In this document: one piece after another, positions 5,783 to 54,976 of the stretch | Layout of the letters: every line of letters starts with the position of its first letter | How positions within the stretch are numbered: position 1 is the first letter of the stretch | Source of the DNA: Hyphochytrium catenoides | Taxonomy: Eukaryota > Protista > Hyphochytriomycota | Reading direction: 5' to 3' | DNA length: 64,000 bases | NCBI GenBank assembly: GCA_900088475.1 | Contig: FLMG01000308.1 | Location: 1-64,000, forward strand | Notes under the pieces: generated by a model | The model's database searches: none | Seen by the model: only the letters and a program-made list of their open reading frames with translations | Told to the model about the DNA's origin: nothing | Position numbers and translations under genes: made by a program

Positions 5783-8700
5783 TTAGGGCTCAGCGTGAAA
5801 AGTCTTAGAGCCGCGTTTGTACTTTGCCTTTGCCTCCTTTGACTTGAGATGCAACACGGTCAGCACCTTGTCAGTCTTCTCATAGGTCTCAGCAACCCCA
5901 AAGGAGGCCCACAGATGCATGAGGCCAGCAATGATCAGCAATATGCCGGAGAAGAAGGAAGGAATAGAAAAGAAGGCAAAGCAGGCTAGAGGAAGGTAGA
6001 GCAACCCGCGAACAAAGGCCAGAAATCCCGGCTTTGTAGGGCCACACCAGAACTCCATAGATCCGATCAGTCCGCCCAGAAGGATCGAATAGATCCCGAC
6101 TTCATAGTCTCCATAAACGGCAGAGGGATAAGGAGGGCCTCTCCACTGTCGGTCGGGCTTACCCTTGACCAGCGCTAGGTCGCAGCTGCCAGAGACCAGA
6201 AGCGCCACAGCCGTGGCGATCGCCCACCAGTAGGCAATACCCTGCAGAAGCAATAGACGTTCAGCAATACACATTGTAGACCAGGCTTGCACTGTCTTCT
6301 CACCTCAACTCTTCGTGACTGCTCCACACGTTTCGGATCTAATTTCACAGTCAATGCGGAGCGTTTTGGCACGCTCTGCTTTCTTGACGGCGCCTCAGTA
6401 GCCATGCCTTGCTCTACGATGGGATTGGTCTCCACGACAGGCATCTCGTTGACCTCTTCCAGATGGTTTGCTGGTACGTAGCCGCGCTGTTCCGATTCGT
6501 TTTGCACGTACCACCAGCCCTTGTTTAGAACAAAGCCTTGGAGAAGCTGTCCCTCACGAACTGACAGCTCCTCTGAGCCTTGTGCTTCAAAGTTGAACAA
6601 TGTAATGAGCTACAAATGAGTAGACGAGAAAGAGCGAAGGTTTAGGTATTCTGGTACCGGTTAAATGCCCAGAGAAAGAGAGACTTACAGTGGCATTCCG
6701 AGGGGTAGGATTGGTCCCTGAAGCAGTGACTGCAATATGGCTAGCATCAATCGCCGTCTTCTGTCCCTCAACAAGCTTGCTTTTATCTGCTTGGCTTGCT
6801 GTCATCTTAGACCTAGCAGAGTCCTTAGCACTGCGCGCCAAGAGCTTCTTATAGGTACGATAGAAGAAGGTAACGACCCCGCTCAGCGCCAATAGGTCAA
6901 TAATGGTCAGACTCCAGCCGATACAGAGCTTTAGTCCGGGACCTCGGCAGACACCTCCGCTCTCAGGCGAGGAGCCAGCTGGTTGATCTGGGTCGTCACG
7001 GTATTCCACTGTGAGAGCTGGGGCACGAGTAACTAGCTGTGATGAGCAGTCAATGCCTCCGGGTGCGCAGCTAGAACTGCCTGAAGGATAGACTGTGCAA
7101 GCATAATAGTCCCTCTGCCAAGTCCAGCAAGGAGGAGCAAAGTCTCCAGAAACCCATCCGGAAGACTCGAGGTTGCCTCTCAGACATGTGGAGATGCATG
7201 CGAGGTAAGTAGAGTTCATGTACACGGTAGTGCCGCTCATCATCAGGTAAGGGATCATGGGACCTCTCTCATATCCTCTGCACACAGCACAGAGATTCGG
7301 TGAGGAAACGGACTGGCAAGGAAGATAGAAACAAAGAACCGCTACGGGGGAGAGTGAGGTCTAGAATGGCTTGTGTCTTGATTGAGGAGAAGAACAAGAA
7401 GAGAGAGAGGGATACAGGAGAGAAAGAATGAACAAGTGGAAGGCAGAGCGAGAGAGAGAGAGAGNNNNNNNNNNNNNNNNNNNNNNNNNNNNNNNNNNNN
7501 NTCGAGACATAAGGATAATGCCTCCTTGAAGCTATAAACATCGAGGCAAGGTGCCTTACCTCTGCAGCGCCTGTAGAATAGCATCGAGGCTGGCTTCGGT
7601 GTTGATGGCTAGGGTCAGTATTTGTGGCCTCACAGCAGTCGTTGATGCCTGAGAAGCTTGAGGGACCAGCCGACGTCGTCGGTCGCGGCCGTTGAACTCC
7701 TTTCGCACGACAGGCAAGGAAACGGAAGTCTGAGAGACGTCAACTTGCAAGGGGCAGACACCACACTTATTTGTCAGCTTGACAGTGACGCAGCCGCTTT
7801 CAAGGTTGGCCCAGCTGCCTGTAACCTCCGGGGAACCCTGAACGACTGTAGGGGAGCAAGGTTGATAAACCTGACCTCCCGAAGTTTCAACTGCACAGAG
7901 ACCATAGCGGACATGTAAGTCCACATCTCCATTCCCAGTATGGTCCACCATCACATCCACAAGCATCCCACTGCCGCCGTCTAAAGAGGAGCAGCCATCG
8001 CCTTCTTCGACTGAGAGGAGAGAATGAAGAGGCGCAGAGAATGGATGGAGCAGTTGGTAAGATTCGTACCGCTGTCAGGAAATACCAGGTCAGGCACACA
8101 GAGCTGTCGGGATATTGCAAGGGGAAACTTCTAAAGGTTAGCTGGGTGCACTTACGTCTTCGGCTGCTTCTGAATTGATTGCCTGAAGCACAATTAGCCT
8201 TCACAGAGACCTGGAAATTTAGCTGCGAATCAGCCTCCCAGGCGCCCCAGAGGTTGCATTGTTTGTACTGGACAACTCCCTTTACCGGCAGTACATCGAT
8301 ACCTGGCTGTAAAGGGAGGTTGCTCATGCAGTGAAGTTCAGCCTTGGACGCACGAGGGTAAAGGACCATCGGCCCGCAAGGTGCACAATTATTGCCTCCG
8401 CAGTCCACTCCAACCTCGTCTTCGTCACGGATACCGTTCCAGCAGTGCCCATTGTCATTCTGACAGGATGAGTCATACTTTACCTGACTGACGGTCTTAT
8501 AATTGGCTAACGCGGTGGCGCTCGAAGAGCTCTTGGGCAGGGCCACAATGAGGTTGTCCATGTATGTGACGGGCACAAGGGACGTCGAGGTGGCATTGTA
8601 AGCAGTTCGGACAGTAATCTGGTCAGCTGGGACACTGATCCCATTATCCGCGAGATAAAGAGAGGTGGCAACGGGAATGGCCTTGGGGTCTTTCGGCAAA

Positions 8701-8804
8701 CCGAAGGCAGTGTTACCAATGGAGACGTGGAGAGTGCCAAAGGAGGTTGCCTGTGCAGTTGGAACTGCAAGGGCCCCAAGGACTGATAACACCACTAGGC
8801 GCAT
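5783..8804 (-). CDS. Multi-domain membrane protein: signal peptide, Cys-rich and PPC-like ectodomain, TM, SH3, p22phox (cytochrome b558 alpha)-like 4-TM domain
   Basis: Signal peptide MRLVVLSVLGALAVPTAQA. Ectodomain motifs CWNGIRDEDEVGVDCGGNNCAPC and GNGDVDLHVRYG. TM LCIGWSLTIIDLLALSGVVTFFY. SH3 LFNFEAQGSEELSVREG..GWWYVQ..RGYVPANHLE. The C-terminal module contains GIYSILLGGLIGSMEF and FVRGLLYLPL. Phase-0 GT-AG introns at 6610-6688 and 6242-6303 join the modules in frame. Upstream exon boundaries (7280-8250) are less certain. Confidence 0.75.
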
Positions 8805-9050: not shown

Positions 9051-9573
9051 CGAGAGAGAGAGAGAGGAAGAAAGAGAGAGAGGGAGAGAGGGAGAGGGGG
9101 AGGGGAGAGAGAGGGAGAGAGAGAGNNNNNNNNNNNNNNNNNNNNNNNNNNNNNNNNNNNNNCTGACAGCCGAAGAGGCAAAGCTATTATCTATAGATAG
9201 GGATAACACACAAATCGGACATTACCTTCAAAGGGCAAATACCCAATATCATTCCAAAGGTAATCGAGCCCTATTCCAGATATCTAACTTTAGAGTGTGA
9301 CGCATTCGGGATGTAAGAGCCTAAGCTGCCCTGATGTTGGTAATCAGTTTCCGGCAGTTTCTCTTCCTCCTAAAACTGCTCAAAGAGCTGCTAACGGTCT
9401 TCGAATCCCGTCTGCAAAAGACGGTTAACGGCTGTTTGGTATTTTTGGAAAGATTCGCGGAAAGGTTGGTCTGGGGTTTGTTTCTTTCGGAGTTGGGGTT
9501 TGTAACGCCTTTTGGAGAGAGGGAGAGAAAGGGGAAGCAGGAGGGACATACAGAGAGAGAGAGGGAGAGGGGA

Positions 9574-15059: not shown

Positions 15060-18000
15060 TCACATTGACATGGCATCGGCGGCGTTGTCGTCTTCCATCT
15101 TCATACCGACGTTCGCTGGCATGACCGTGCATTCGGGCTCTAGATCCTCCCACTGTGGAACTGCGGATGGTTCGCTGAACGAGAGCTGAGGCGAGGAGCA
15201 GGAGGTCCTCCTCTTTTTGTCCGCTGTGGGTGGAAGAGGCTGCTCCTCCATCAGACCAGCAGACAGGTCTTGATGAGGTCTAATTCGACCAGGCTGCCTT
15301 TCAACTTCTTCAAGCAAAGAAGACGACGTCGACGAAGTGAGGGAGGAGCCCGTAGAAGCAGGTCGACGTTGTTGGAGCAGATTCTTGAGAAGAGTGTTCC
15401 GTCGTACTATTTCTCCTTGAAGCTTCTTTACCACCCGACCAATCCGTTGCTCCTGTGCTCGAGCCTCCTGAGACATCTTGCCAATGGCAGACCGTAGCTG
15501 AGTGATACAAGAGAGATAGCTCTGCAACTTTCTCTCTTTCTCCACACCTTCTTCTTCTTTTTGCCGAAGAAGATGGCGCAGCTCTTCCCTCTCTTTCTCC
15601 TTCATCTGCATAAGAGAAAGGAGCTTCTCCTGCTCTTCACTCTTTCTCTGCAGCTCTGCTCTAAAGAGATTATTATCTCTCTCAAACTCTGCCAGCGCTT
15701 GCTGCAAGAAAGAGTACTGCTGAGAAATGGAATTGAGCAGACTGTTCCTCTCTTCCCGCTGCTTCTCGGCTTCCACTAGCTGCTGCCGTAAGGCTTCCTC
15801 TCTGAACTTCGCCTGCTGCAACTCGTGCTCCTTCTGCTCAAGAGCCGAACTTAGCTTATCTTTTTCTTCCCGGATAGCACTAGAGGCGGTCTCCGAGAGG
15901 GCACACTGTTGTCTCAAGTTCTCCACTTCCGCTATTAACTCCTGAAGTTTGTCTTCCTTTTCACTTAACAACGCCGATAAGTCGTGGCACTGTTGTTCAA
16001 CTGCTTCTTTCTCTCTTCTGAGTCTCTCTTCCTCGTCTTCTGCTTGCATACGACGATAGGTCTCCTCCTGATAGGCAGCTTCCAGGCGTTGAAGGGTCGC
16101 CACTTCCTTGAGAAGCTTTGCCTTGGCGTCCCTCTCTTTAGAGATAGCGGAGAAGGATGCGGCCAACTCTCTCTCCAGTTCTTTCACCTGCATCTTCTGT
16201 CTATCAAGTTCTGCGGCCAGCCTATTGCTAAGATCCTTGCTTTTACCACGAGCTTCACCTAATTCTGACAATTGAGAATCCAGTCCCTGCACCTCAGCCG
16301 AAAATGCTGAAAGCATTCCTTCGAGCTCGGCTTTCTCTCGTTCTAGACGAAGGATATCTTCTTCTTTTTGCCTCGCGGCTGCCTGCGATTGTAAAAGCCT
16401 GCTTTCTCCCGTCTCCAATTCTAATCTGGTAGCTGCGAGCTTCGCGTTGATCCTGCTGATCTCTTCCTCCTTTTCTCGGCATAATACCCTTAGGCTCTCT
16501 TTCTCACTTCTTTCTTTCTCAGTTTCATGCCTGAGGCTTTCTAGTTCCTTCTGCAAGGTTTTTGTCGTGAGCTCCTTTAGCTGCACCACTTCCGCACAAA
16601 GACGCCTATTGTCGGTTCTGAGAGAGGCCAAGAGCTCTTCAATGGCTTCAAACGGCTCCTCACTGACTTTGCTCTCTAAGCTCTGTAGGTGTGCACTAGC
16701 GTTCAAAGCGTTAAAGTCGAATGTTGAGACCGCCGCGTCAGGACCGAAGAAGGTGCCAAAGAGGGCGTTGGCATAAGCTTTGTTCTCTTTAAGTTGTTGC
16801 TGCAAAAATTTCAGGGTTTGCCGGAGGTGAGACAATGTGGCAGCGTGCTCTCGCTCCTTCTCTGCTTGAGCGACTCGGTCATCCTCTTTCTTGGCTCTCA
16901 GTTGTAGCAGCTCTGCCTCGTACTCCGCCTTTAAGGTGGACAAGCTAGAGGCATGTTCGCGCACACTGGCTTCTCTTTGCTGCTTGTTAGAAGGCCGCAT
17001 ACGGGAATTAAAAGAGACAAGAACATTAGTTCTGAAAGTGCAGTTAAGGCGCAGTCAATTCTTGCTTGCCTGCTGCAGAGTGTAGATCGCCTCCTCCTTC
17101 TCCTTAACTTGGCCTCTTAGCTCGCTTATTGTTCTTTCCAGGGCTCTAAGCTCAGCCTTGCTTTCCTGTATCAAGCAGATGTTAGTTGAGCTCATTTGCT
17201 TGAATGTGCTATCAACTCTCATGGTCCAGCCAACTTCAGAGATGCTTTCGATAGTCTCTGTACCTTTAGCTCCTCGTCTGGTTGGAGTGACATGGAAGAC
17301 GCCTTCGAAGAACCGCGAAGCAGACGGAGCTGTCGCCTAAGGTCTTGCACCATGGTTTCCTTTTGGTGGCTAAGGTCTAGCAGTTCATCTTCAGCATTTC
17401 TTAGCGCTGTGGTCTTTTGGCGAAGCTCCTTCTCTTTGAGGGCCAACTGTAAGCGGAACGGTTAAAAGGGTTTGTACTGAATGACCAAGGAAATAATGGA
17501 GTGGACATGCGCACCTTGCTCTTCATGCCATTCAGCTCTACGGTGGCAGCCTCCAACTGGTCTTTAAGTATTCTGGCCTCCTCGTCTAGCTCCCTCTCCC
17601 TTAGCCGCTGAGCGTCAATCAAACGTGGCCTCGCCGTGCTACCTGCACTCTCGAACTCAGACAAAGTCCTTCTTGACTCCTCACTCTCTCTTTTTAAGGT
17701 TTCACACGTCTTTCGTAACGTGCCCTTTTCCTCTTTCCAATTGCGCTGCAACTCACTTAGTTTGGCCTCCGTCGTGGCCAGAGAGGTTACCAGTCGCTCC
17801 TTTTCTGCTCTCTGGTGCATAAGTTCTCTCTCTGCATCTTGGCGTGCTAGTGTGAGAGTTTCCAAATGCTGCTTTTGATGGCGATGTTCTCTTTCAAGAG
17901 CCTCGTAGCGCAGCCTCCACTCCCGCTCCCGCTCTCTCTCTGCGGCAAAGGATAGCCGGTGCTCTTCGTCTAAGGCTTTCTGTGTGGCTAGACGGTCTTT

Positions 18001-21000
18001 CTCGTACTTCACAGCTTCATAGTCTCGTGTTAAAGTCCGAATGTTCTCCTTTTCCTTCTGTAAGTCAGCTTCCAGGGCTTTAATCCGCTCCTCCCTTCTA
18101 CGCTTGAGATCCTCCAACTCCTCGCGCTCTCTTTCAAGGGCTCGGTTGGCTGACTCATTTAGCTGACGCGACCTCTCTAATTCATCTCTCCACTTTTTTT
18201 TATCCCGTCGAAGTCCCTCCAGCTCCGCAATGTGAAGGTTCGACCTCGTCCTTGTGGCCTCTGCTTCCTCTTTTTCTCTTTGCAGCTCTCTTTTTAGTTG
18301 CAAGACCTCCTCCTCCTTTTCTGTGGCTAATTTTCTGGCAACAGCTAGGTCCGCAGTAAGGGTATCTAAAGAACGCTGCAGCTGTGAGATCCGGAGAGAA
18401 AGATCGGCCTGTTCCTTTTGACTCTCTCTTCTTTCGTCCTCCGCCTTCTTCAGCTCCTTTTTGAGCCTTTGCACTTCCATCTGCTGTTGTGAAAGGTCTG
18501 CCGTCAAGCTGCTGATGCGGTCGGAAGATATTTTTATACGTGTGCTCTCCCTTTTCTCCCGCTCCTCCAGGCCTTCTATTGTGGCAGATGCCGTCTGAAG
18601 GTCTGTCAAAGATGCCGAAAGTTGCGCGGAAAGCGACTTAACTTGTTCCCGAGCGATCTGGCAATAAAAGATGAGACGGAAGTTCACATACAAGAGGTTA
18701 GACGGATTCCCGGGACAAAAACGCCAACACCAACTCAGCTAAGGAGCGTAGGGAAAAACCCAAGAGACAGTAGAGAGCAATAAAACTCTAAAGTTAACAG
18801 CATGGCAAATCGATGACAGACCTGTAGCTCCTGCTGCAATTGCGAGGCCTGTCTTTCCGATTTCGCATCTTTGTCCGACCTTAATCTCTGAAGCTCCGCC
18901 TCGTGAGCAGTAAGAAGCGTTCGTCGCTCCTGCTTGAGCCGAAAGACCTCTCCTTCCAGAGCAGGGAGCCGAACAAGCTAGGGGCAGAAGAGTAGGATGC
19001 CATATATCAGCATTGCCCCGTCATAAACACTTTCCCGAAGGACGATATGCGACTGACGCTGCTAATCTTTTCAAACCTCTGAGCTACGTACCTTCAGCTC
19101 TTGCAGCTCCTGTTGAACTTCTCGAGCTTCTGCTTTTACTCTTCTCTGTTCGTCAATGGCGTGCTCTGCCTCCCGCTTTGCGGCGTGGAGGACTTTTTGG
19201 GTCTCCGTCAAGGTATCTTCAAGGGAGCCCAGTTTCGTATCAGCATCCAACTTCTCTGCTAGGACTTTTTGGAGCCGAGTATTGATCTCATCCAGCTGAA
19301 CGTGACGAGAGACAGTCAGGCTAAATATATCGAAACCCCCCACGCTCTCTACCACATGCCCAGCCAATACCTTACCTCTATCTTAACTGCCTGGTGCTCT
19401 CTGCGCTCCCTGTCCATGTCTTCTCCAAGCCTCTGATAGTCACGAGTAAGGTCGGCGAGCTTCCTCTCAGTCTCAGCCTGAGCTTTTAGGGCTGTTTGCG
19501 ATGTTGTTACTGATGGTTTTAGTGCAGCAATCTCCGCCTTCAGTTGTACGATACACTGGAAAGGAATGAATAAGAAGAAAAGGAAAAGATGAGGCCTCTC
19601 CCTGCGTTATACCTCGATATATCCTCTTACCTCCTTGTATTGAATGCACTGCGTCTCCAGGTTCTTACGTTCTACAGCCATACTTTCACTCTCTGACTGA
19701 ACTTGCTGCAGTTCTTTTTTGACATGTTGAAGCTGCGTTTCTAAAGATGAGGCCAAAAGGGCAGACCTCGCATCGTTCTCATTTATTTTCTGTCTGAGTT
19801 CTCTAAGCTCTTCCTGAGCTCTATCATGCAGCTCTCTCTGCATCTGCTTAGCTTCAGCCGAGCTTTGGGCACTTCTTTTCAGCTGCTGCAGCTCTACTTT
19901 CAGAGCTTTGTTTTCGGTCTGCGCATTAGACAGTTGGTCCTAGGTCCAGGACATGTTAGACTGTGGCTAGTGCTAGTATAAGACACACAGACCTCTTAAG
20001 CGCTTACCTTAACAAGAGCACACTCTTCTTCAGCCTCTTGAACCATGGTTTTCATTCTTGCTTTGAGCGCGTCCAAGCTCTGAGCGTGATGCTTTTCTCT
20101 CTGTTCAAGGACTTCAGCCGAACTACGTGCAAGTTCCTCCTGGGCTTCTTCCAGAGCCCGCTGACGAGTTTTTAGCTCTTTATTCTCAAGCTCTAATGCT
20201 GCTACGGAGCTCTGCAGAATGTCGCAGCTCTCCCTCTGTTGGCTTAGTTCCTCCGTCACCTGCTTGTGACGGTTAAGTAGTGACTGGTACTCCACTTTCT
20301 CCTTTGCTGCCAACGAGTTAGCGCGGTCTAAAAGGTCCTGTAGTCTTTGAGATTCAGCGGTCAGCTGCCCCTTGCCCTTCTCCACCTCCAGCGCTTTCAA
20401 CTCTACATCCGCAATCTGTTTCTGTAGCGAGGCATGGAGTTCCCTCATCTCCNNNNNNNNNNNNNNNNNNNNNNNNNNNNNNNNNNNNNNNNNNNNNCGC
20501 TTCCGTAAGCTCGTGCAGCTGGTGGTTGAGGTCCCGAACATGCGCGTTGGTCTGTTCCCTTTGCTTCTCTATCAACCGTTTGTCGGACTGCAAGGATTGG
20601 ATAAGGGCATTCAGCTCCTGCAATTGCTGCTGGATTTCCCCATCACTGGCCGTTGATAGGTTGCTAGCTGCTTTTGATGAAAGCCTTTGCATTGATGGCT
20701 GGGTCATAGGAAGTGAGGAGGATATAACGTCTGGAGACGGAGGCACTAGGGCAGCCCTGACTGAGCCAGAAGTGCCATTATCTTGCTTGGCTTGACTGTG
20801 AGCAAGTAGCAGCTTGAGCTGAGCAATCTCGTTATTACGTCGGAGCTCGCGCTCCCGAAGAGACTTCACTTGAGCTGCAAGTGCTTCAATTGTGCCCTCT
20901 TTGTCACTCGCAACTTGCGTCTGCAATTTGCCAAAGACATCTTCGTCTTTCGACTCTTTCGCTACAGGTGAAATTTCCGTAAGCCTGAAGGAAACCTTCT

Positions 21001-47779: not shown

Positions 47780-49204
47780 ATGGATCCAAGCAAACGGACA
47801 ACCTTGACCACACTCACTGGCACTGATCAGAGAAAGAGGAGACAGACAACGCTAACGACACGTAAGCCAGTGACGCCGGATCACAAAGGCTTGAGACGTC
47901 ATGCCAGGCAGAGCGGTAAAGCCCACGACCAAGATGACTCAAGACAAAGAGCGAGTCAAGGTGTCCTAAGTGGTGACCAAGAAGGTTCGAAACAAAAAGG
48001 AAGCGAATGGGGCGTCGCAACTTTTGATGATGTACCGCTACCATCTTCCCGAAGGCAGTTCTCAACTCTCTGGAGCAAACATCGCCAGTTATTTGAAAAA
48101 GTTCAAAGACTGTGTATCTCTGGTCCGCCACTTTATGAAGCCCCGGATGCCCAGACCGCGCTATTGGAACGGCTAGAGGAGTCCTGCAGTCTTGGCAATC
48201 CTGATGATGTGATCTATGAAGTGCTTCGGGGAATTGCTGTCAGGGCAAAAGACTACCCCTCATCACAATGTTCAGAGCCAGCGTCCTGCCTTGCGGGAGG
48301 TACGACTAAAAGTGAATTAGAAGGAAAGCCCATGAGTGCTCCAGATCCAAGTGGTTCCGTTACCTTTAACAGTGCTTTCGATACTCAGAGTCTAAACCGT
48401 CGGGCTGAGAAGCGGGCAAGGTCTATTATCCGTCTTCTTCCACATGGTGCAGATGGAATCGACAGCTTGTTGGACGTTGGATGCTCGGAAGGGTCGATCA
48501 CAGCGGCGCTTGCAGAGGCACTGAAACTACCTGAGGACCGAGTCTTTGCCGCAGACATCACTCTCCCCACGGACAAGACGACGCATAAGCTTAACTTTCA
48601 GCTGTTAGAGGCCAACAAGCCTCTTCCCTTTGAGGAGGCGTCATTTTCTTTAATAACATGCCTTATGTGCCTCCATCACGTGGAAGACCAAGAGCTTATG
48701 ATGCGAGAGTTCTTTAGAGTTCTCAGACCGGGAGGCTACCTTGTCATTCGAGAACACGATTTGACTGAGCCAGGAATGCGCATAGTGATTGACATCATGC
48801 ATGGCCTATACAGTCTAGTCTGGACTGACCCTCCGGAGGATCCTGCATTCATAAACAACTACCGAGCCCTATATCGGAGTAAAGCTAGCTGGAGGTCCCT
48901 TGCCCAGAAAGCACACCTATGTGTCTATACAGCTGGTGAGCAGCGGCATCGAGGTGGACGCTACTGCAAGAATGCGAATGGCTCACATCAGCAACGAGAC
49001 CAACAGGCTGCCTGTCACTTTAAAGGAAATAGCTTTCACCATCCCAAGTCCAAAGTAAGGCGTGAAGGCTCGAGACCAGAGAGTAGTGAGGCGGGAACCG
49101 ATTTCTATGGAGCATCTACTTCTGCAGCTGCCTGTAATGCTTACTTTGATATCTTTGTCAAACCTGTGGATGGCGCTCCCGCGGACGCATTTTCAGTCCA
49201 GTGA
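47780..49204 (+). CDS. Class I SAM-dependent methyltransferase (Methyltransf_11-like), intronless
   Basis: Motif I SLLDVGCSEGSIT, then VFAADI, LPFEEASFSLITCLMCLHHVED and EFFRVLRPGGYLVIREHD, in a continuous 474-aa ORF. Confidence 0.88.
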   Translation: MDPSKRTTLTTLTGTDQRKRRQTTLTTRKPVTPDHKGLRRHARQSGKAHDQDDSRQRASQGVLSGDQEGSKQKGSEWGVATFDDVPLPSSRRQFSTLWSKHRQLFEKVQRLCISGPPLYEAPDAQTALLERLEESCSLGNPDDVIYEVLRGIAVRAKDYPSSQCSEPASCLAGGTTKSELEGKPMSAPDPSGSVTFNSAFDTQSLNRRAEKRARSIIRLLPHGADGIDSLLDVGCSEGSITAALAEALKLPEDRVFAADITLPTDKTTHKLNFQLLEANKPLPFEEASFSLITCLMCLHHVEDQELMMREFFRVLRPGGYLVIREHDLTEPGMRIVIDIMHGLYSLVWTDPPEDPAFINNYRALYRSKASWRSLAQKAHLCVYTAGEQRHRGGRYCKNANGSHQQRDQQAACHFKGNSFHHPKSKVRREGSRPESSEAGTDFYGASTSAAACNAYFDIFVKPVDGAPADAFSVQ

Positions 49205-50025: not shown

Positions 50026-51432
50026 TCAAGAAAGAATGGTTCTCAGGGAGACAAAGGTCGTCAACGTGACAGCTATCAGGCCGGATAAGGCAATGGCGGC
50101 GCTTCCAAATACTCTAGGACGCGAGAGCTCCTTATGAAAGAGGCTGAGGTGCATCAGTGGTGGGGCCACAAACCCTAAAAAACTCATACTTAAACCGCCT
50201 ACAAGGTTCGTGACCAAACCGAAGCTCTTGGCCTGGGATAATATCACCGTGAGCCCCACCAATATGCTGCGAATAATCTTCTCGCGGACACTTAGGCCAG
50301 CTGAGGGACAAACCTCTGCCGTTCGGACTCCACTTCCCTGATGGAGGGAAGACCCGAAAGTTGACTCCACCAGCTCTCGACCAGGCGCCAACGTTAGAGG
50401 ATAGGCGGACAGGAGACTAAAGCAGATAGCCAGCCTCACCGCCAACATCAGCCAGCTGTCCTTTGGCAGGTTGTCAAGGATGATGCTTCTCACATCCTTT
50501 CCGAAAGCCATGTATCCAAGTAGCCCAAAGGTAATGGCTAGTGCTGACACAACGGACGTACTCCAGGAGATCGCCTGCGAGAAATGCTTAGGCTCTTGCA
50601 TAGCACTCTCGACTGGAAAGACTAGGAAATGCACGCAGAAGAGAAAGCTGATGGTGCCAAAGGATAGCAGATAGGTTTCTGACTCAAGTCCACGTTGATT
50701 AGCTACGTCAAACAGGGACAGTTGAGGCTCCTGAAAGCCATACCACATGGTCGCCGCAATGCCAAAGGCCAAGCTTGCCAGACCGATGACGCTGACCATC
50801 GATAACTGTTTGAAAGAGTTCAATAGGGCCATTGCCATAACCACAAGCCCTGCCAGGCTGGCGAAGATCCAGCTTGATAATGATGGGTAAAGAGTGTTCA
50901 TAGTCTGAGTAAAGAAACTGATGTAGCTGGCCGAGACTCCCAGCGATGTGAAGACCAGTAGGCCGTAGGTCAACATATATCCTTGACTTCCAAACGTAAA
51001 CTCCATCGCGTCCAGATATGGGGATTTACCGCGGTTACTGCCATTGACATGCGTGCCTCGAAGTAAAGAGGAACTCTCATTGAGAACAGGGAGCCCCTCT
51101 TGCGCCTTGCGTCGTACCACCTCATTCTTGACTTGGATTAGCATGTCGGTGGTATAGGCAGAGAGGCATCCGACGACAGCGATGGTGACGATTGCTGCTA
51201 ATGGACCCATGTTTTTGAAAGCAAGCGGCAAAGCCAAGCAACCAGCTCCTATGATGGCTTTCATTAGGTTGATAGTGGTCTGGGTGAATGTAGTGCCTAG
51301 CTTAGCTTCATTACCCTTCCATTGGCTTGTTGACTGCACCAGCAGGTCTCGCTTTGTCGAATGCCCATCCTTAGCCCTTGACCCAAGACACAGGGGATGT
51401 ACTTGAGGGCTAAGAGTTAGGGGCGACGCCAT
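50026..51432 (-). CDS. Amino acid/auxin permease (AAAP, Aa_trans) family transporter, intronless
   Basis: TINLMKAIIGAGCLALPLAFKNMG, FPVESAMQEPKHF, FGLLGYMAFG and YPLTLAP, with about 11 hydrophobic segments. The first ATG is at 51432. Confidence 0.92.
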   Translation of the reverse strand: MASPLTLSPQVHPLCLGSRAKDGHSTKRDLLVQSTSQWKGNEAKLGTTFTQTTINLMKAIIGAGCLALPLAFKNMGPLAAIVTIAVVGCLSAYTTDMLIQVKNEVVRRKAQEGLPVLNESSSLLRGTHVNGSNRGKSPYLDAMEFTFGSQGYMLTYGLLVFTSLGVSASYISFFTQTMNTLYPSLSSWIFASLAGLVVMAMALLNSFKQLSMVSVIGLASLAFGIAATMWYGFQEPQLSLFDVANQRGLESETYLLSFGTISFLFCVHFLVFPVESAMQEPKHFSQAISWSTSVVSALAITFGLLGYMAFGKDVRSIILDNLPKDSWLMLAVRLAICFSLLSAYPLTLAPGRELVESTFGSSLHQGSGVRTAEVCPSAGLSVREKIIRSILVGLTVILSQAKSFGLVTNLVGGLSMSFLGFVAPPLMHLSLFHKELSRPRVFGSAAIALSGLIAVTLTTFVSLRTILS

Positions 51433-51790
51433 CTCTTCTGTTAATATCTCTGACGCCACCCTCTCTTCAGTGCTCTACTCTTCAACGTCTTCTCAAAGGG
51501 CCAAGAATCGTGGTCTGCTATGGTGTGCAGCGAGATAGAGATAAGAATCGCCGTTGTTCAAAGTCGAATTGATCTTGAAGCAGGAGCTGCAAAAGCTTGA
51601 GCAGCAGCAGGCCAAAGCTGTGCGTCTGTGTGTGTGATAATAAGAAAGTGGTGTCAAAGAAAGGAACCTGCTCTCCTGCTCAGTACTGCTGTCTCATTGC
51701 TTGCCTTTCCCCCCCTGTCGCCCTTGTGACAGCTGCCGCTCATTGATGCTCCTCCTCCAGCTCTTCCTAGTCCCAAGCTTCTGCGACGGC

Positions 51791-52699: not shown

Positions 52700-54976
52700 C
52701 TAATAGATATCTGGGATGCCAAGTATCGCAGGTTGACTTGCACAGGATAAGAGCACACTTTCTGTCACCTCCGGCTCATACCTCACTGTGTTCTTGGTTA
52801 TAACTGCGACACTTCCGTCAGCGTCCGTGACGGGCTGAAGCGAGAACCAGTTGACATAGCCCAGCACCCGGTGCTGCCCATACTGAAGCATCACAAAGCC
52901 TTCAGCGGCCAAGTTCATTGACTCGCACAACAGAGTCCCTGGAACTTTCGCACGGGTAATTTGATAGGCTTCGCCTTTAGCAAAAGCCAACCGGCATCTC
53001 TGCAAGACCTCGCACAGCGTCTGGCTCGAGGCCAATTTGTCCTCGCTCCTCTGGAGCATTGCACCGCGAAGGTGCATTCGGTTAAAGCCTGAGAACATGA
53101 AGGCTAACAGGCTCCCATTACGCATAAAGTAGGTCTGGACCACAGCCATGAGAGCTACAGCGCCCACCGCGCATATCGTGAACCAGCCGAACATAAAGTA
53201 GTATAAGGTGACGTAGCTCATCTGGGAGGTATAGACCTTGATGATGCTGTTCACATAGTGACGTACAACCTTGCCCACCCAGTTATAGCCCTGGAAAAGG
53301 TCCATACCACGGGAGTTGACATAGGTAGGAATGTAGGTCCAGACCACAGGGAGAGTGACCAGAAACAAGTCCTCCGCAAAGTCTACAGAGTAATCTTTAG
53401 ATACGATGATGTTGATCACCAGTGTACAGATCCTCAAGAGTAAAGCGCATGGCCAGATGATCCGAGCGATAGACATGTATTTGAGGACCACGATGATGTA
53501 CGCTGTGTTGCCCGTGTAGATCAGCTGTTGACAGAACATCACAATGTCTTCCACGCTCATGATGGTCTCAAAGGTCAGAAGGCTGAGGATGACCAAATCC
53601 CGACGTTCTCGCTTATGAATAACAAGTCCAAGGGATCGAGATGACGCCCAGTCCCACAGCTTACGGTTCTGGCCTGCCAGTGCAACGTAAAGAGGGAAAT
53701 AGATCGACCGCATACGATAGGCAAAGACCACAAGGAGAATGGCGACTCTCGCATAGTCCTTGTACCAAGATCGGATCTGCGTCAGGTCGCCCTCTGAGTA
53801 GTGATGGGTGCTGATAGTAACATTCATTCCGTCCTCCGTCCATGTCATATTGTTATCCCTCGCTGTGGACGTCGTGCGAGCGGTCCATGGCGCTGCTGTG
53901 TCGCCGTACCAAGCATACGTTGTGATGTGGGTCGCTGCTCCGCCGATGTGGATGTCAGTAGAGCAGCCTAGAAGTTCCTCGAGGCTGAAGACCGGCGTTC
54001 TATAGTCGAGAGCCAGGCTAGTGAAGGCCAGGGTGCCGCCGTCTTTAGAGATATTGGCAATCAGCACCTCTTGAATATCCGTCTTCTTGTCGAAGATATA
54101 AAAGCCGCCGAACTCTCGACACCATTTTGATGCCTCAGTCCGGCTGATGCGATAGTTGATGACTCTTCCCTTCATTGTGGTGTAGGAGTCACACGGAAAG
54201 ACATCTCCCTCGCCGACTAGCTGCAGACAAGATCTGCTCAATGAGCTGGTTTGCACTGACCATTGGGTGGTCTTATACCGCTCACTAGGGATCCAGATAT
54301 GCTGGCTATCCTTGGTCGTGCAGTTGCCAAAGAAGTTTCCAATGTGCTGATTAGCTTCTTTATCAAGAGGATAGTATGAGCGGCAACTGCCACCAGCCAA
54401 GGATCCTGTCCCATACACTGGGAGCTCGTAGTAGCAACCCTTAAAATTCTTTTCATCCATCTTACACGGAAGAGCATCCTCTATCCGGAAGACATTCTTA
54501 ACCCGCAGCTCCCAGACAGCCTCCTGATTGTCGCTGTCAGTATACAGATAGTAGCCATACAGCGTCTTTGCCGGGTCCAGGATGGAGTTGAACGTGGACA
54601 TAAGCCACATAAAGAAGCCAAAGAGTATCAGAAGGTTCTGCAGAAGTCTCCGTAATGGGTTAGTCGTTCGGCCTCCCGCTGGACCCTTCCGTGAGCGATA
54701 CGCATCGCCGCCGCCTCCGCTTGTTGCCGAGTTGCTCTGGTTCTTGTTATTGTTCAGGTTAGCTGCTCCTCCTGCTGCTGCGGATGAATTGAAGAGAGAG
54801 GAGGAGACGGGCTCCACGCGCGACATATTAGTGGTACTCTTCTCTTCGTCTTCAGCGGTCAGTGTTGGTTGTTTTGTTGTTTCTTCTATGGCACTGGCGC
54901 TGACTTTGATGCGTGACCCTCTCAGCGTGCCCAGTCGACTTGTCGATGGAGCAGGTGGTCCTAACGATAAGCCCAT
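52700..54976 (-). CDS. Uncharacterised multi-pass membrane protein: one N-terminal TM, Cys-containing ectodomain, about 5-6 C-terminal TMs; intronless
   Basis: Continuous 758-aa ORF. TM LLILFGFFMWLMSTF, an ectodomain of about 270 aa with roughly ten Cys and NxS/T sequons, then several hydrophobic helices. Confidence 0.85.
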   Translation of the reverse strand: MGLSLGPPAPSTSRLGTLRGSRIKVSASAIEETTKQPTLTAEDEEKSTTNMSRVEPVSSSLFNSSAAAGGAANLNNNKNQSNSATSGGGGDAYRSRKGPAGGRTTNPLRRLLQNLLILFGFFMWLMSTFNSILDPAKTLYGYYLYTDSDNQEAVWELRVKNVFRIEDALPCKMDEKNFKGCYYELPVYGTGSLAGGSCRSYYPLDKEANQHIGNFFGNCTTKDSQHIWIPSERYKTTQWSVQTSSLSRSCLQLVGEGDVFPCDSYTTMKGRVINYRISRTEASKWCREFGGFYIFDKKTDIQEVLIANISKDGGTLAFTSLALDYRTPVFSLEELLGCSTDIHIGGAATHITTYAWYGDTAAPWTARTTSTARDNNMTWTEDGMNVTISTHHYSEGDLTQIRSWYKDYARVAILLVVFAYRMRSIYFPLYVALAGQNRKLWDWASSRSLGLVIHKRERRDLVILSLLTFETIMSVEDIVMFCQQLIYTGNTAYIIVVLKYMSIARIIWPCALLLRICTLVINIIVSKDYSVDFAEDLFLVTLPVVWTYIPTYVNSRGMDLFQGYNWVGKVVRHYVNSIIKVYTSQMSYVTLYYFMFGWFTICAVGAVALMAVVQTYFMRNGSLLAFMFSGFNRMHLRGAMLQRSEDKLASSQTLCEVLQRCRLAFAKGEAYQITRAKVPGTLLCESMNLAAEGFVMLQYGQHRVLGYVNWFSLQPVTDADGSVAVITKNTVRYEPEVTESVLLSCASQPAILGIPDIY

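What the first reader, a model, noticed from the sequence alone, without database searches (positions are those of the whole stretch)
5783..8804. Receptor-like fusion of ectodomain, TM, SH3 and a p22phox-like module: candidate receptor-coupled NADPH-oxidase subunit
Seen in sequence: one spliced gene in which clean phase-0 introns (6610-6688, 6242-6303) join a single-pass ectodomain protein to an SH3 domain and then to a 4-TM module. That module reads YWWAIATAVALLVSG..GIYSILLGGLIGSMEF..FVRGLLYLPLACFAFFSIPSFFSGILLIIAGLMHLWASFGVAETY. It aligns by eye with p22phox/CYBA (FGAYSIVAGVFVCLLEYP; YVRAVLHLLLSVPAGF; IYLLAAVRGEQW). Established: p22phox is a small stand-alone NOX partner with cytosolic termini whose Pro-rich tail recruits SH3 domains of p47phox/NOXO1. 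Here the Pro-rich tail is absent and an SH3 is built in cis, and the topology is self-consistent (out, TM, cytosolic SH3, 4-TM). Inference: an extracellular-sensing NOX partner that couples ligand or surface contact to ROS production. I do not recall this architecture being described.
Basis: partly seen in the sequence, partly recalled or inferred. Interest (0 to 1): 0.8.

Follow-up and report, generated by a model that had tools for sequence, protein, structure and literature searches.

The report
Receptor-like protein with p22phox-like membrane module
A protist gene joins a cysteine-rich outer domain and an SH3 domain to a four-helix membrane module, and that module's only detectable relative sits in another organism fused directly to an NADPH oxidase, so it is probably a new kind of oxidase partner subunit.

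Summary
A minus-strand, five-exon gene (8804..5783, all introns GT-AG, 817 aa) encodes a signal peptide, a ~460-aa Cys-rich ectodomain with no known relatives, one TM helix, a firm SH3 domain and a C-terminal 4-TM module. The N gap (7465-7501) lies inside intron 2, in CT-rich non-coding sequence. Stop codons block read-through from both flanking exons.

Formal p22phox membership is not shown. Pfam gives only a sub-threshold COPI_assoc hit, sequence profiles find no PDB p22phox, and shape-only alignment finds generic four-helix bundles.

The NOX link did gain independent support. An exhaustive search of 1.8 billion proteins found one relative of the 4-TM module (E 2e-5). In that 829-aa protein the same SH3-then-4-TM cassette is fused in frame to a complete NOX2-type NADPH oxidase. 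Foldseek ranks human p22phox chains 1, 2 and 4 of 350,542 PDB chains for the better of two models (E 0.24). The p22phox TM2 and TM3 blocks, which carry core residues Glu53, Arg90 and His94, find their best match at equivalent places in both proteins.

No RNA data, no NOX in this window and no binding data are available. The ligand-to-ROS coupling idea is untested. Verdict: a new variant of a known kind, interest moderately high.

The parts
8156..8804 (-). Exon 1: start ATG at 8804, signal-peptide-like N-terminus (aa 1-19), first part of the Cys-rich ectodomain including a CxNGxxDxDExGVDCGGxxCxxC-type stretch
   Evidence: No Pfam or PDB family.
8011..8155 (-). Intron 1 (145 nt, GT..AG, phase 1)
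7560..8010 (-). Exon 2: ectodomain, Cys-rich, includes an RRRR stretch
   Evidence: No Pfam or PDB family.
7278..7559 (-). Intron 2 (282 nt as assembled, GT..AG, phase 2). It contains the assembly gap 7465-7501 next to a (CT)n run.
   Evidence: stops block read-through in both exon frames; the 3' flank is 76% pyrimidine.
6689..7277 (-). Exon 3: last part of the ectodomain, the single TM helix (about 6860-6928, aa 484-506) and the cytosolic juxtamembrane segment, all in one uninterrupted exon
6610..6688 (-). Intron 3 (79 nt, GT..AG, phase 0)
6304..6609 (-). Exon 4: SH3 domain (about 6451-6606) plus a ~50-aa linker. There is no ATG upstream of the domain within the exon.
   Evidence: (SH3_9 E 4.7e-9)
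6242..6303 (-). Intron 4 (62 nt, GT..AG, phase 0). It must be removed to keep the frame. It contains an in-frame ATG at 6274-6272.
5783..6241 (-). Exon 5: 4-TM module (about 5867-6241), Lys-rich cytosolic tail without PxxP, stop at 5785-5783
   Evidence: single relative P0001, E 2.3e-5; four helices, pLDDT 64, pTM 0.51; p22phox chains ranked 1, 2 and 4

Best explanation
The gene encodes a type-I membrane protein. It has a cysteine-rich extracellular domain of unknown family, one TM helix, a cytosolic SH3 domain, and a C-terminal four-helix membrane bundle that acts as a p22phox-like partner of a NOX-type NADPH oxidase encoded elsewhere in the genome.

Proposed working:
- The 4-TM bundle docks on the transmembrane domain of the oxidase, as p22phox does on NOX1-4.
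- The SH3 domain takes over the recruiting role that the p22phox Pro-rich tail plays in animals, but with inverted polarity. The membrane subunit carries the SH3, and the cytosolic organiser/activator or the oxidase carries the PxxP.
- The ectodomain places a surface-exposed module on the oxidase complex.

Shown: the exon structure, the SH3 domain, four predicted helices, one relative with the same cassette fused to a NOX, and a weak but specific resemblance to p22phox.

Inferred: homology with p22phox proper, binding to a NOX in this organism, the SH3 ligand, and any sensing role of the ectodomain.
For: (1) Rosetta-stone fusion. Exhaustive phmmer of the 152-aa module against 1.84 billion representatives gave exactly one hit, P0001 (E 2.3e-5, 31% identity, query 15-138 against 136-248). 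tblastn of P0001 on the window gave E 1e-10. P0001 reads SH3 (aa 5-56), Pro-rich linker, 4-TM, then Ferric_reduct + FAD_binding_8 + NAD_binding_6. Its oxidase part matches human NOX2 best (5e-54; NOX5 2e-48). It is one continuous 829-aa ORF on a 2738-nt contig with UTR-like ends.

(2) SH3 lies directly upstream of the module in both proteins, so SH3 + 4-TM is a conserved cassette.

(3) With the better AF2 model (pLDDT 64, pTM 0.51), Foldseek ranks p22phox chains 8kei_A, 8gz3_A and 7u8g_B at 1, 2 and 4 of 350,542 chains. Probabilities are 0.96, 0.96 and 0.87, identity is 19% over 134 columns (the whole p22 chain), and TM-scores are 0.42-0.49.

(4) The p22phox TM2 and TM3 blocks place best, without gaps, at equivalent positions of both proteins. 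Window module: residues 48 and 76, with 125/5000 and 35/5000 shuffles reaching the score. P0001: residues 159 and 187, with 297/5000 and 192/5000.

(5) These blocks hold Glu53, Arg90 and His94, p22phox core residues mutated in chronic granulomatous disease (PMC9568551). They correspond to Glu63, Arg78 and Tyr82 here. Tyr stands at the His94 position in Ciona and Lottia p22phox. The spacings Y-x4-G-x6-E-[YF]-x2-G and G-x18-E-x-[WY] are shared with human p22phox (read).

(6) Topology fits. An even number of helices keeps both ends cytosolic, which the cytosolic SH3 requires here and the NOX N-terminus requires in P0001.

(7) A PRR-less p22phox homologue (fungal NoxD/Pro41, papers listed) and SH3 built into protist NOX (Naegleria, PMC3591440) are precedents for both deviations.
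Against: - Pfam Cytochrom_B558a does not match either module, even at E 10. The only hit is COPI_assoc at 17.7 bits, below its 30-bit cut-off, and only for the window protein.
- phmmer and a two-sequence profile find no p22phox among PDB sequences at E 10.
- Foldseek E-values are weak (0.24-0.55). The hit vanishes with the poorer single-sequence model.
- Language-model features score Flower 0.87 against p22phox 0.86, and Flower only for P0001.
- The TM4 block and Tyr121 do not align convincingly.
- The cytosolic TM2-TM3 loop is about 25 residues shorter than in p22phox and lacks its polybasic stretch.
- The family has only two members, and P0001 rests on one contig from one sample.
- There is no transcript evidence, no NOX in the 64-kb window, and only unchecked notes that this genome has NOX/FRD genes.
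Confidence: 0.55

Rival explanations
1. The 4-TM module is a Flower/TVP18- or TVP15/COPI_assoc-type trafficking module. The protein would then be a surface receptor or adhesion protein whose SH3 and 4-TM parts govern endocytosis or Golgi-endosome sorting, unrelated to ROS in this organism.
For: Flower clusters are the nearest by language-model features (0.87, ranks 1-3; also for P0001). The only Pfam signal is COPI_assoc (E 0.004). Flower also has four TM helices with cytosolic ends and works in endocytosis (PMC13470650, abstract).
Against: Neither Pfam family reaches its cut-off, and P0001 matches neither. All atlas scores are below 0.9, which the tool rates as leads only. This reading does not explain why the only relative is fused to a complete NOX2-type oxidase. 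It also does not explain why solved p22phox tops the Foldseek list. No solved Flower chain showed up in any PDB list here, so that comparison may be one-sided.
Confidence: 0.2
2. The full-length fusion is a gene-model artefact. The cell would mainly make a shorter SH3-4-TM protein (start at the in-frame Met after the TM, aa 524) or a stand-alone 4-TM protein (ATG at 6274-6272 in intron 4). Alternatively, exons 1-2 belong to another gene across the gap. The 'receptor' part would then not be attached.
For: No RNA evidence is available. The gap sits in intron 2, with its length only estimated. In-frame ATGs exist at both places. P0001 shows that SH3 + 4-TM can start a protein.
Against: Exon 3 is one uninterrupted ORF that contains ectodomain cysteines, the TM helix and the segment leading to the intron-3 donor. 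So the TM-to-SH3 link needs only a 79-nt canonical phase-0 intron. Introns of 62-79 nt leave no room for promoters. Exon 3's ectodomain part has no signal peptide of its own, whereas exon 1 supplies one, and the exon 2/3 phases match.
Confidence: 0.15
3. The module is a lineage-restricted orphan four-helix membrane bundle with no specific tie to NOX here. In P0001 it would be merely an extra N-terminal membrane extension of the kind seen in other ferric-reductase-family proteins.
For: Protist and plant FRD proteins often carry two or six additional N-terminal TM helices of unknown role (PMC3591440). Four-helix bundles are a common arrangement.
Against: The cassette is conserved across a 31%-identity distance together with its SH3. 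The p22phox-specific block matches fall at equivalent positions in both proteins. p22phox is the top Foldseek hit.
Confidence: 0.1

Closest known systems
p22phox / CYBA (Pfam Cytochrom_B558a, PF05038), membrane partner of NOX1-4
   Same: Four-TM bundle with both ends cytosolic. It is the top Foldseek match among solved chains. Gapless TM2 and TM3 block similarity includes the Glu53/Arg90/His94(Tyr) core positions. The one relative of the module is covalently joined to a NOX2-type oxidase.
   Different: No Pfam or profile match. No C-terminal Pro-rich region. The TM2-TM3 loop is about 25 residues shorter and has no polybasic stretch, and the TM1-TM2 outer loop is longer. An SH3 domain is built in upstream. 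Here it is preceded by a fifth TM helix and a ~460-aa ectodomain. p22phox is a free-standing protein of about 195 aa.
Fungal NoxD / Pro41 (PRR-less p22phox homologue)
   Same: A 4-TM NOX partner that lacks the Pro-rich tail, recognised as p22phox-like only by weak similarity (papers listed; the 4-TM and PRR-less details are from my own knowledge of those papers, which I did not read here).
   Different: NoxD is a small stand-alone protein without SH3 or ectodomain. No sequence comparison with NoxD could be run here.
Naegleria gruberi NOX homologues with an SH3 domain inserted in the NADPH-binding domain
   Same: An SH3 domain placed in cis on the membrane oxidase machinery of a protist, implying an unknown PxxP-bearing partner (PMC3591440).
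   Different: There the SH3 sits inside the catalytic subunit's C-terminal domain. There is no 4-TM module and no ectodomain.
Flower/CACFD1/TVP18 (PF10233) and TVP15/COPI_assoc (PF08507)
   Same: Small 4-TM proteins with cytosolic ends. They are nearest by language-model features (0.87) and give the only, sub-threshold, Pfam hit.
   Different: Not known to pair with NOX. Neither HMM reaches its cut-off, and P0001 matches neither.
DUOXA1/2 and the DUOX M0 helix plus peroxidase-like ectodomain
   Same: Works like them only: an oxidase complex that carries a large extracellular domain through extra membrane helices. The p22 site on NOX2 corresponds to the site of the DUOX1 M0 helix (PMC9568551).
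   Different: Different folds and no sequence relation. DUOXA did not appear in any search.

Membership tests
p22phox (Pfam PF05038 Cytochrom_B558a) | Match to the family HMM above the gathering score | tested here: not met
   No PF05038 hit at E up to 10 for the window module, its core, or the P0001 module. No PDB p22phox by phmmer or a two-sequence profile at E 10.
p22phox (Pfam PF05038 Cytochrom_B558a) | [quoted passage not shown] | tested here: met
   AF2 gives four helices: 2-26, 39-66, 71-89 and 96-143. Hydropathy agrees. The orientation is inferred from the cytosolic SH3 upstream and, in P0001, from the NOX domain downstream.
p22phox (Pfam PF05038 Cytochrom_B558a) | Conserved polar core Glu53 / Arg90 / His94 / Tyr121 (PMC9568551) | tested here: inconclusive
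   The TM2 and TM3 blocks align without gaps at Glu63, Arg78 and Tyr82. Shuffles reaching the score: 125/5000 and 35/5000. The same holds in P0001. Tyr occurs at the His94 position in Ciona and Lottia p22phox. The TM4 block and Tyr121 are not matched (1245/5000).
p22phox (Pfam PF05038 Cytochrom_B558a) | C-terminal Pro-rich region that binds the tandem SH3 of p47phox/NOXO1 | tested here: not met
   The tail after TM4 is Lys-rich with no PxxP. An SH3 domain is present upstream instead.
p22phox (Pfam PF05038 Cytochrom_B558a) | Structural similarity to solved p22phox | tested here: inconclusive
   Foldseek ranks p22phox chains 1, 2 and 4 (probability 0.96, E 0.24, TM 0.42-0.49). There is no hit with the poorer model. 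p22phox is not in the top 50 by VIA-align Z.
p22phox (Pfam PF05038 Cytochrom_B558a) | Obligate heterodimer with a NOX1-4-type catalytic subunit | not testable with these tools
   Indirect evidence only: the single relative P0001 has the cassette fused to a NOX2-like oxidase. There is no NOX in the window.
Flower/TVP18 (PF10233 Cg6151-P) | Match to the family HMM | tested here: not met
   No hit at E up to 10. Only language-model feature similarity of 0.87, below the tool's 0.9 line.
TVP15 / COPI_assoc (PF08507) | Match to the family HMM above the gathering score | tested here: not met
   17.7 bits against a cut-off of 30 (E 0.0039) for the window module. Nothing for P0001.
SH3 domain (PF00018 / PF14604 / PF07653) | Match to the family HMMs above the gathering score | tested here: met
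   SH3_9 36.4 bits (cut-off 30), SH3_1 33.5 (22.9), SH3_2 33.4 (21.8).

The most novel reading that the evidence does not exclude
SH3 + 4-TM is a previously unrecognised protist counterpart of p22phox in which the SH3/Pro-rich polarity of the animal system is inverted. Evolution has attached this cassette either directly to the oxidase (P0001) or, as here, to a receptor-like ectodomain. That would give a single-chain link between an extracellular binding event and assembly or activation of a NOX complex.
Probability: 0.3. Interest if true: 0.8.

Novelty: new variant of a known kind. Interest (0 to 1): 0.66.

Why it matters
Kawahara et al. 2007 found p22phox-like proteins only in animals, a choanoflagellate and Dictyostelium, and no PRR-bearing orthologue in fungi. 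A PRR-less fungal counterpart, NoxD, was recognised later. How NOX enzymes of other eukaryotic groups are stabilised and regulated is largely unknown.

If this reading is right, three things follow:
- A p22phox-like module with a built-in SH3 would show that the 'membrane partner plus SH3/PxxP recruitment' logic is older and more flexible than the animal system.
- It would provide a natural NOX-partner fusion (P0001) suitable for structural work.
- It would give a candidate for direct coupling of a surface domain to ROS production in a stramenopile-like protist.

It also gives a concrete handle, the SH3 + 4-TM cassette, for finding NOX partners in protist genomes.

Tried and rejected
- Word-index homology search with the module alone, with P0001 residues 1-260 (only generic SH3 proteins) and with the two-sequence profile at E 10: no further relatives.
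- Two metagenome scans and two viral-contig scans: none confirmed.
- ESM Atlas with the P0001 SH3 + 4-TM part: no usable hit.
- Atlas shape search: only unrelated bacterial helical proteins.
- RNA evidence: no run listed.
- Ectodomain pieces against Pfam at E 10 and against PDB sequences at E 1: only noise, namely glucose-1-phosphate adenylyltransferase at E 0.46 and PRKCSH_1 at E 0.21.
- Single-sequence AF2 model (pLDDT 55, pTM 0.28): too poor, and its Foldseek list is meaningless.
- A direct hhalign of the module against p22phox, Flower or NoxD alignments was not possible. No tool returned those proteins as referable sequences, and I did not type long sequences. Only the three short p22phox fragments quoted in the finding were scored.
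- The first attempt at that script timed out.
- Rejected: read-through across the gap (stops in both frames); a NOX gene next door (tblastn of P0001 on the window).
Full report
**What is in the sequence**

On the minus strand, five open segments join through four canonical GT..AG introns into one 2454-nt CDS of 817 aa. The exons are 8804-8156, 8010-7560, 7277-6689, 6609-6304 and 6241-5783. Two further introns (8011-8155 and 7278-7559) lie in the ectodomain part.

**The gap**

The scan program asked for the assembly gap to be tested first. The 37 N at 7465-7501 lie inside intron 2, 58 nt after the donor and 187 nt before the acceptor. The exon-2 frame runs into TAA at the donor. The exon-3 frame has a stop 29 codons upstream of the acceptor. 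The 3' flank is 76% pyrimidine and begins with a (CT)n run. The gap therefore interrupts non-coding sequence. The exon phases (2+1) fit across it. A small hidden exon inside the gap cannot be ruled out. A second 37-N gap at 9126-9162 has the same CT-repeat setting.

**Protein layout**

| Residues | Feature |
|---|---|
| 1-19 | Signal-peptide-like N-terminus |
| 20-483 | Ectodomain; 22 Cys up to residue 485 (the last already in the TM helix), two N-glycosylation sequons |
| about 484-506 | One TM helix, followed by YRTYKK |
| within about 564-617 | Cytosolic SH3 domain (SH3_9 E 4.7e-9, SH3_1 3.2e-8) |
| about 618-666 | Linker of about 50 aa |
| about 667-790 | Four-helix membrane module |
| 791-817 | Lys-rich tail without PxxP |

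The ectodomain matches nothing in Pfam, even at E 10, and nothing in PDB sequences.

**Is it one gene?**

- The SH3 exon has no ATG before the domain.
- The 62-nt intron 4 must be removed to keep the frame.
- Exon 3 is a single ORF that holds ectodomain cysteines, the TM helix and the run-up to the intron-3 donor.

So the TM-SH3-4-TM linkage needs only two short canonical introns. No RNA run could be listed, so splicing is not demonstrated. In-frame ATGs after the TM helix (aa 524) and inside intron 4 (6274-6272) leave room for shorter isoforms.

**What the 4-TM module is: family tests**

- Pfam gives no Cytochrom_B558a (p22phox) hit and no Flower hit. The only signal is COPI_assoc at 17.7 bits, below its 30-bit cut-off.
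- phmmer and a two-sequence profile find no PDB sequence at E 10.
- Language-model features put Flower (0.87) and p22phox (0.86) side by side, with TMEM72 and COPI_assoc just behind. All are below the tool's 0.9 line.
- By sequence-family criteria the module is therefore not a demonstrable p22phox member.

**The decisive new result**

An exhaustive phmmer search of the module against 1.84 billion representative proteins returned one hit only, P0001 (E 2.3e-5, 40.5 bits, 31% identity). P0001 has 829 residues, in this order:

1. An N-terminal SH3 domain (aa 5-56).
2. A Pro-rich linker.
3. The related 4-TM module (about 120-250).
4. About 20 residues later, a complete oxidase: Ferric_reduct, FAD_binding_8 and NAD_binding_6.

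The oxidase part matches human NOX2 best among solved structures (5e-54; NOX5 1.8e-48). P0001 is one continuous ORF on a 2738-nt Logan contig from SRR28082848, with short UTR-like ends and GC3 of 0.81. It therefore comes from a different organism than the window, where GC3 is 0.56.

The same SH3-then-4-TM order in two proteins only 31% identical makes this a conserved cassette. Its covalent fusion to a NOX2-type enzyme is classic Rosetta-stone evidence that the cassette works with NOX.

**Resemblance to p22phox proper**

- *Foldseek.* An AF2 model built on the two-sequence alignment (pLDDT 64, pTM 0.51) gave human p22phox chains at ranks 1, 2 and 4 of 350,542 chains. Probabilities were 0.96, 0.96 and 0.87, E-values 0.24-0.55, TM-scores 0.42-0.49, and identity 19% over 134 columns, which is the whole p22 chain.
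The TM2 and TM3 fragments find their best place at equivalent positions in both proteins. The TM4 fragment does not beat chance.

| Fragment | Window module: best position, shuffles reaching the score | P0001: best position, shuffles reaching the score |
|---|---|---|
| TM2 | residue 48, 125/5000 | residue 159, 297/5000 |
| TM3 | residue 76, 35/5000 | residue 187, 192/5000 |
| TM4 | not at the equivalent position, 1245/5000 | not at the equivalent position, 3337/5000 |

- *Core residues.* The two matching blocks contain Glu53, Arg90 and His94. These are p22phox core residues whose mutation causes chronic granulomatous disease. Here they correspond to Glu63, Arg78 and Tyr82. Tyr also occupies the His94 position in Ciona and Lottia p22phox.
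- *Differences.* The TM2-TM3 cytosolic loop is about 25 residues shorter and lacks the polybasic stretch. The outer loop 1 is longer. There is no Pro-rich tail.

**Most likely mechanism (confidence 0.55)**

The 4-TM bundle is a p22phox-like docking subunit for a NOX encoded elsewhere. The SH3 replaces the p22phox Pro-rich tail as the recruiting device, with inverted polarity. The ectodomain puts a surface module on the complex.

Only the anatomy, the cassette conservation and the NOX fusion in P0001 are shown. Binding to a NOX here, the SH3 ligand and any sensing by the ectodomain are inference.

There are precedents for each deviation:
- Fungal NoxD/Pro41 is a PRR-less p22phox homologue.
- Naegleria NOX homologues carry an SH3 in cis (PMC3591440).
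- The Pro-rich stretch between SH3 and 4-TM in P0001 could be an intramolecular ligand. This is speculative.

Earlier, unchecked notes of this scan say that the genome is an oomycete-like or stramenopile-type protist and holds ferric-reductase/NOX-family genes elsewhere. I could not verify this. The window itself has no NOX.

**Rivals**

- A Flower/TVP-type trafficking module (0.2).
- A gene-model artefact, with shorter isoforms or a separate upstream gene (0.15).
- An orphan bundle with only a coincidental NOX fusion (0.1).

**Novelty**

The full-text searches run here found no paper describing an SH3-p22phox-like cassette, its fusion to NOX, or its attachment to an ectodomain. With two members among about 15 billion proteins, the cassette is rare or poorly sampled. 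I rate it a new variant of a known kind (a NOX membrane partner), with interest 0.66. The rating is tempered by the lack of transcript and interaction data and by the weak statistical support for homology with p22phox proper.

Noticed in passing
window 9126-9162: A second 37-N assembly gap just upstream of the gene. Like the one at 7465-7501, it abuts long CT/CTCTCC microsatellite sequence. Both gaps look like unresolved simple repeats.
   Followed up: partly
window 6272-6274 (intron 4) and exon 3 around aa 524: In-frame ATGs could yield a stand-alone 4-TM protein of about 163 aa, or an SH3-4-TM protein of about 294 aa, if alternative starts or intron retention occur. The second layout mirrors the N-terminus of P0001.
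   Followed up: no
L001 120-2609 (protein P0001, Logan SRR28082848): A NOX2-type NADPH oxidase with an N-terminal SH3, a Pro-rich linker (aa 57-80) and a 4-TM module fused in front. The papers searched do not describe this architecture. Its TM4 reads YSAV where NOX2 has the TXXT motif that contacts p22phox. The source organism is unknown and has high GC3 (0.81).
   Followed up: partly
window 8355-8492 (-): The ectodomain holds a compact Cys motif of the form C-x-N-G-x-x-D-x-D-E-x-G-V-D-C-G-G-x-x-C-x-x-C. It has no Pfam match (best PRKCSH_1, E 0.21) and may be an undescribed small disulfide module.
   Followed up: partly
window 47783-49204 (+) and 50029-51459 (-): Neighbouring genes further along the window: a class-I SAM methyltransferase (Methyltransf_11, E 1e-16) and an Aa_trans amino-acid transporter (E 3e-59). 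Neither has an evident tie to the finding.
   Followed up: no
window 15063-17000 (-), 17404-18693 (-), 52703-54976 (-): Long ORFs (646, 430 and 758 aa) without any Pfam family at E 0.001.
   Followed up: no
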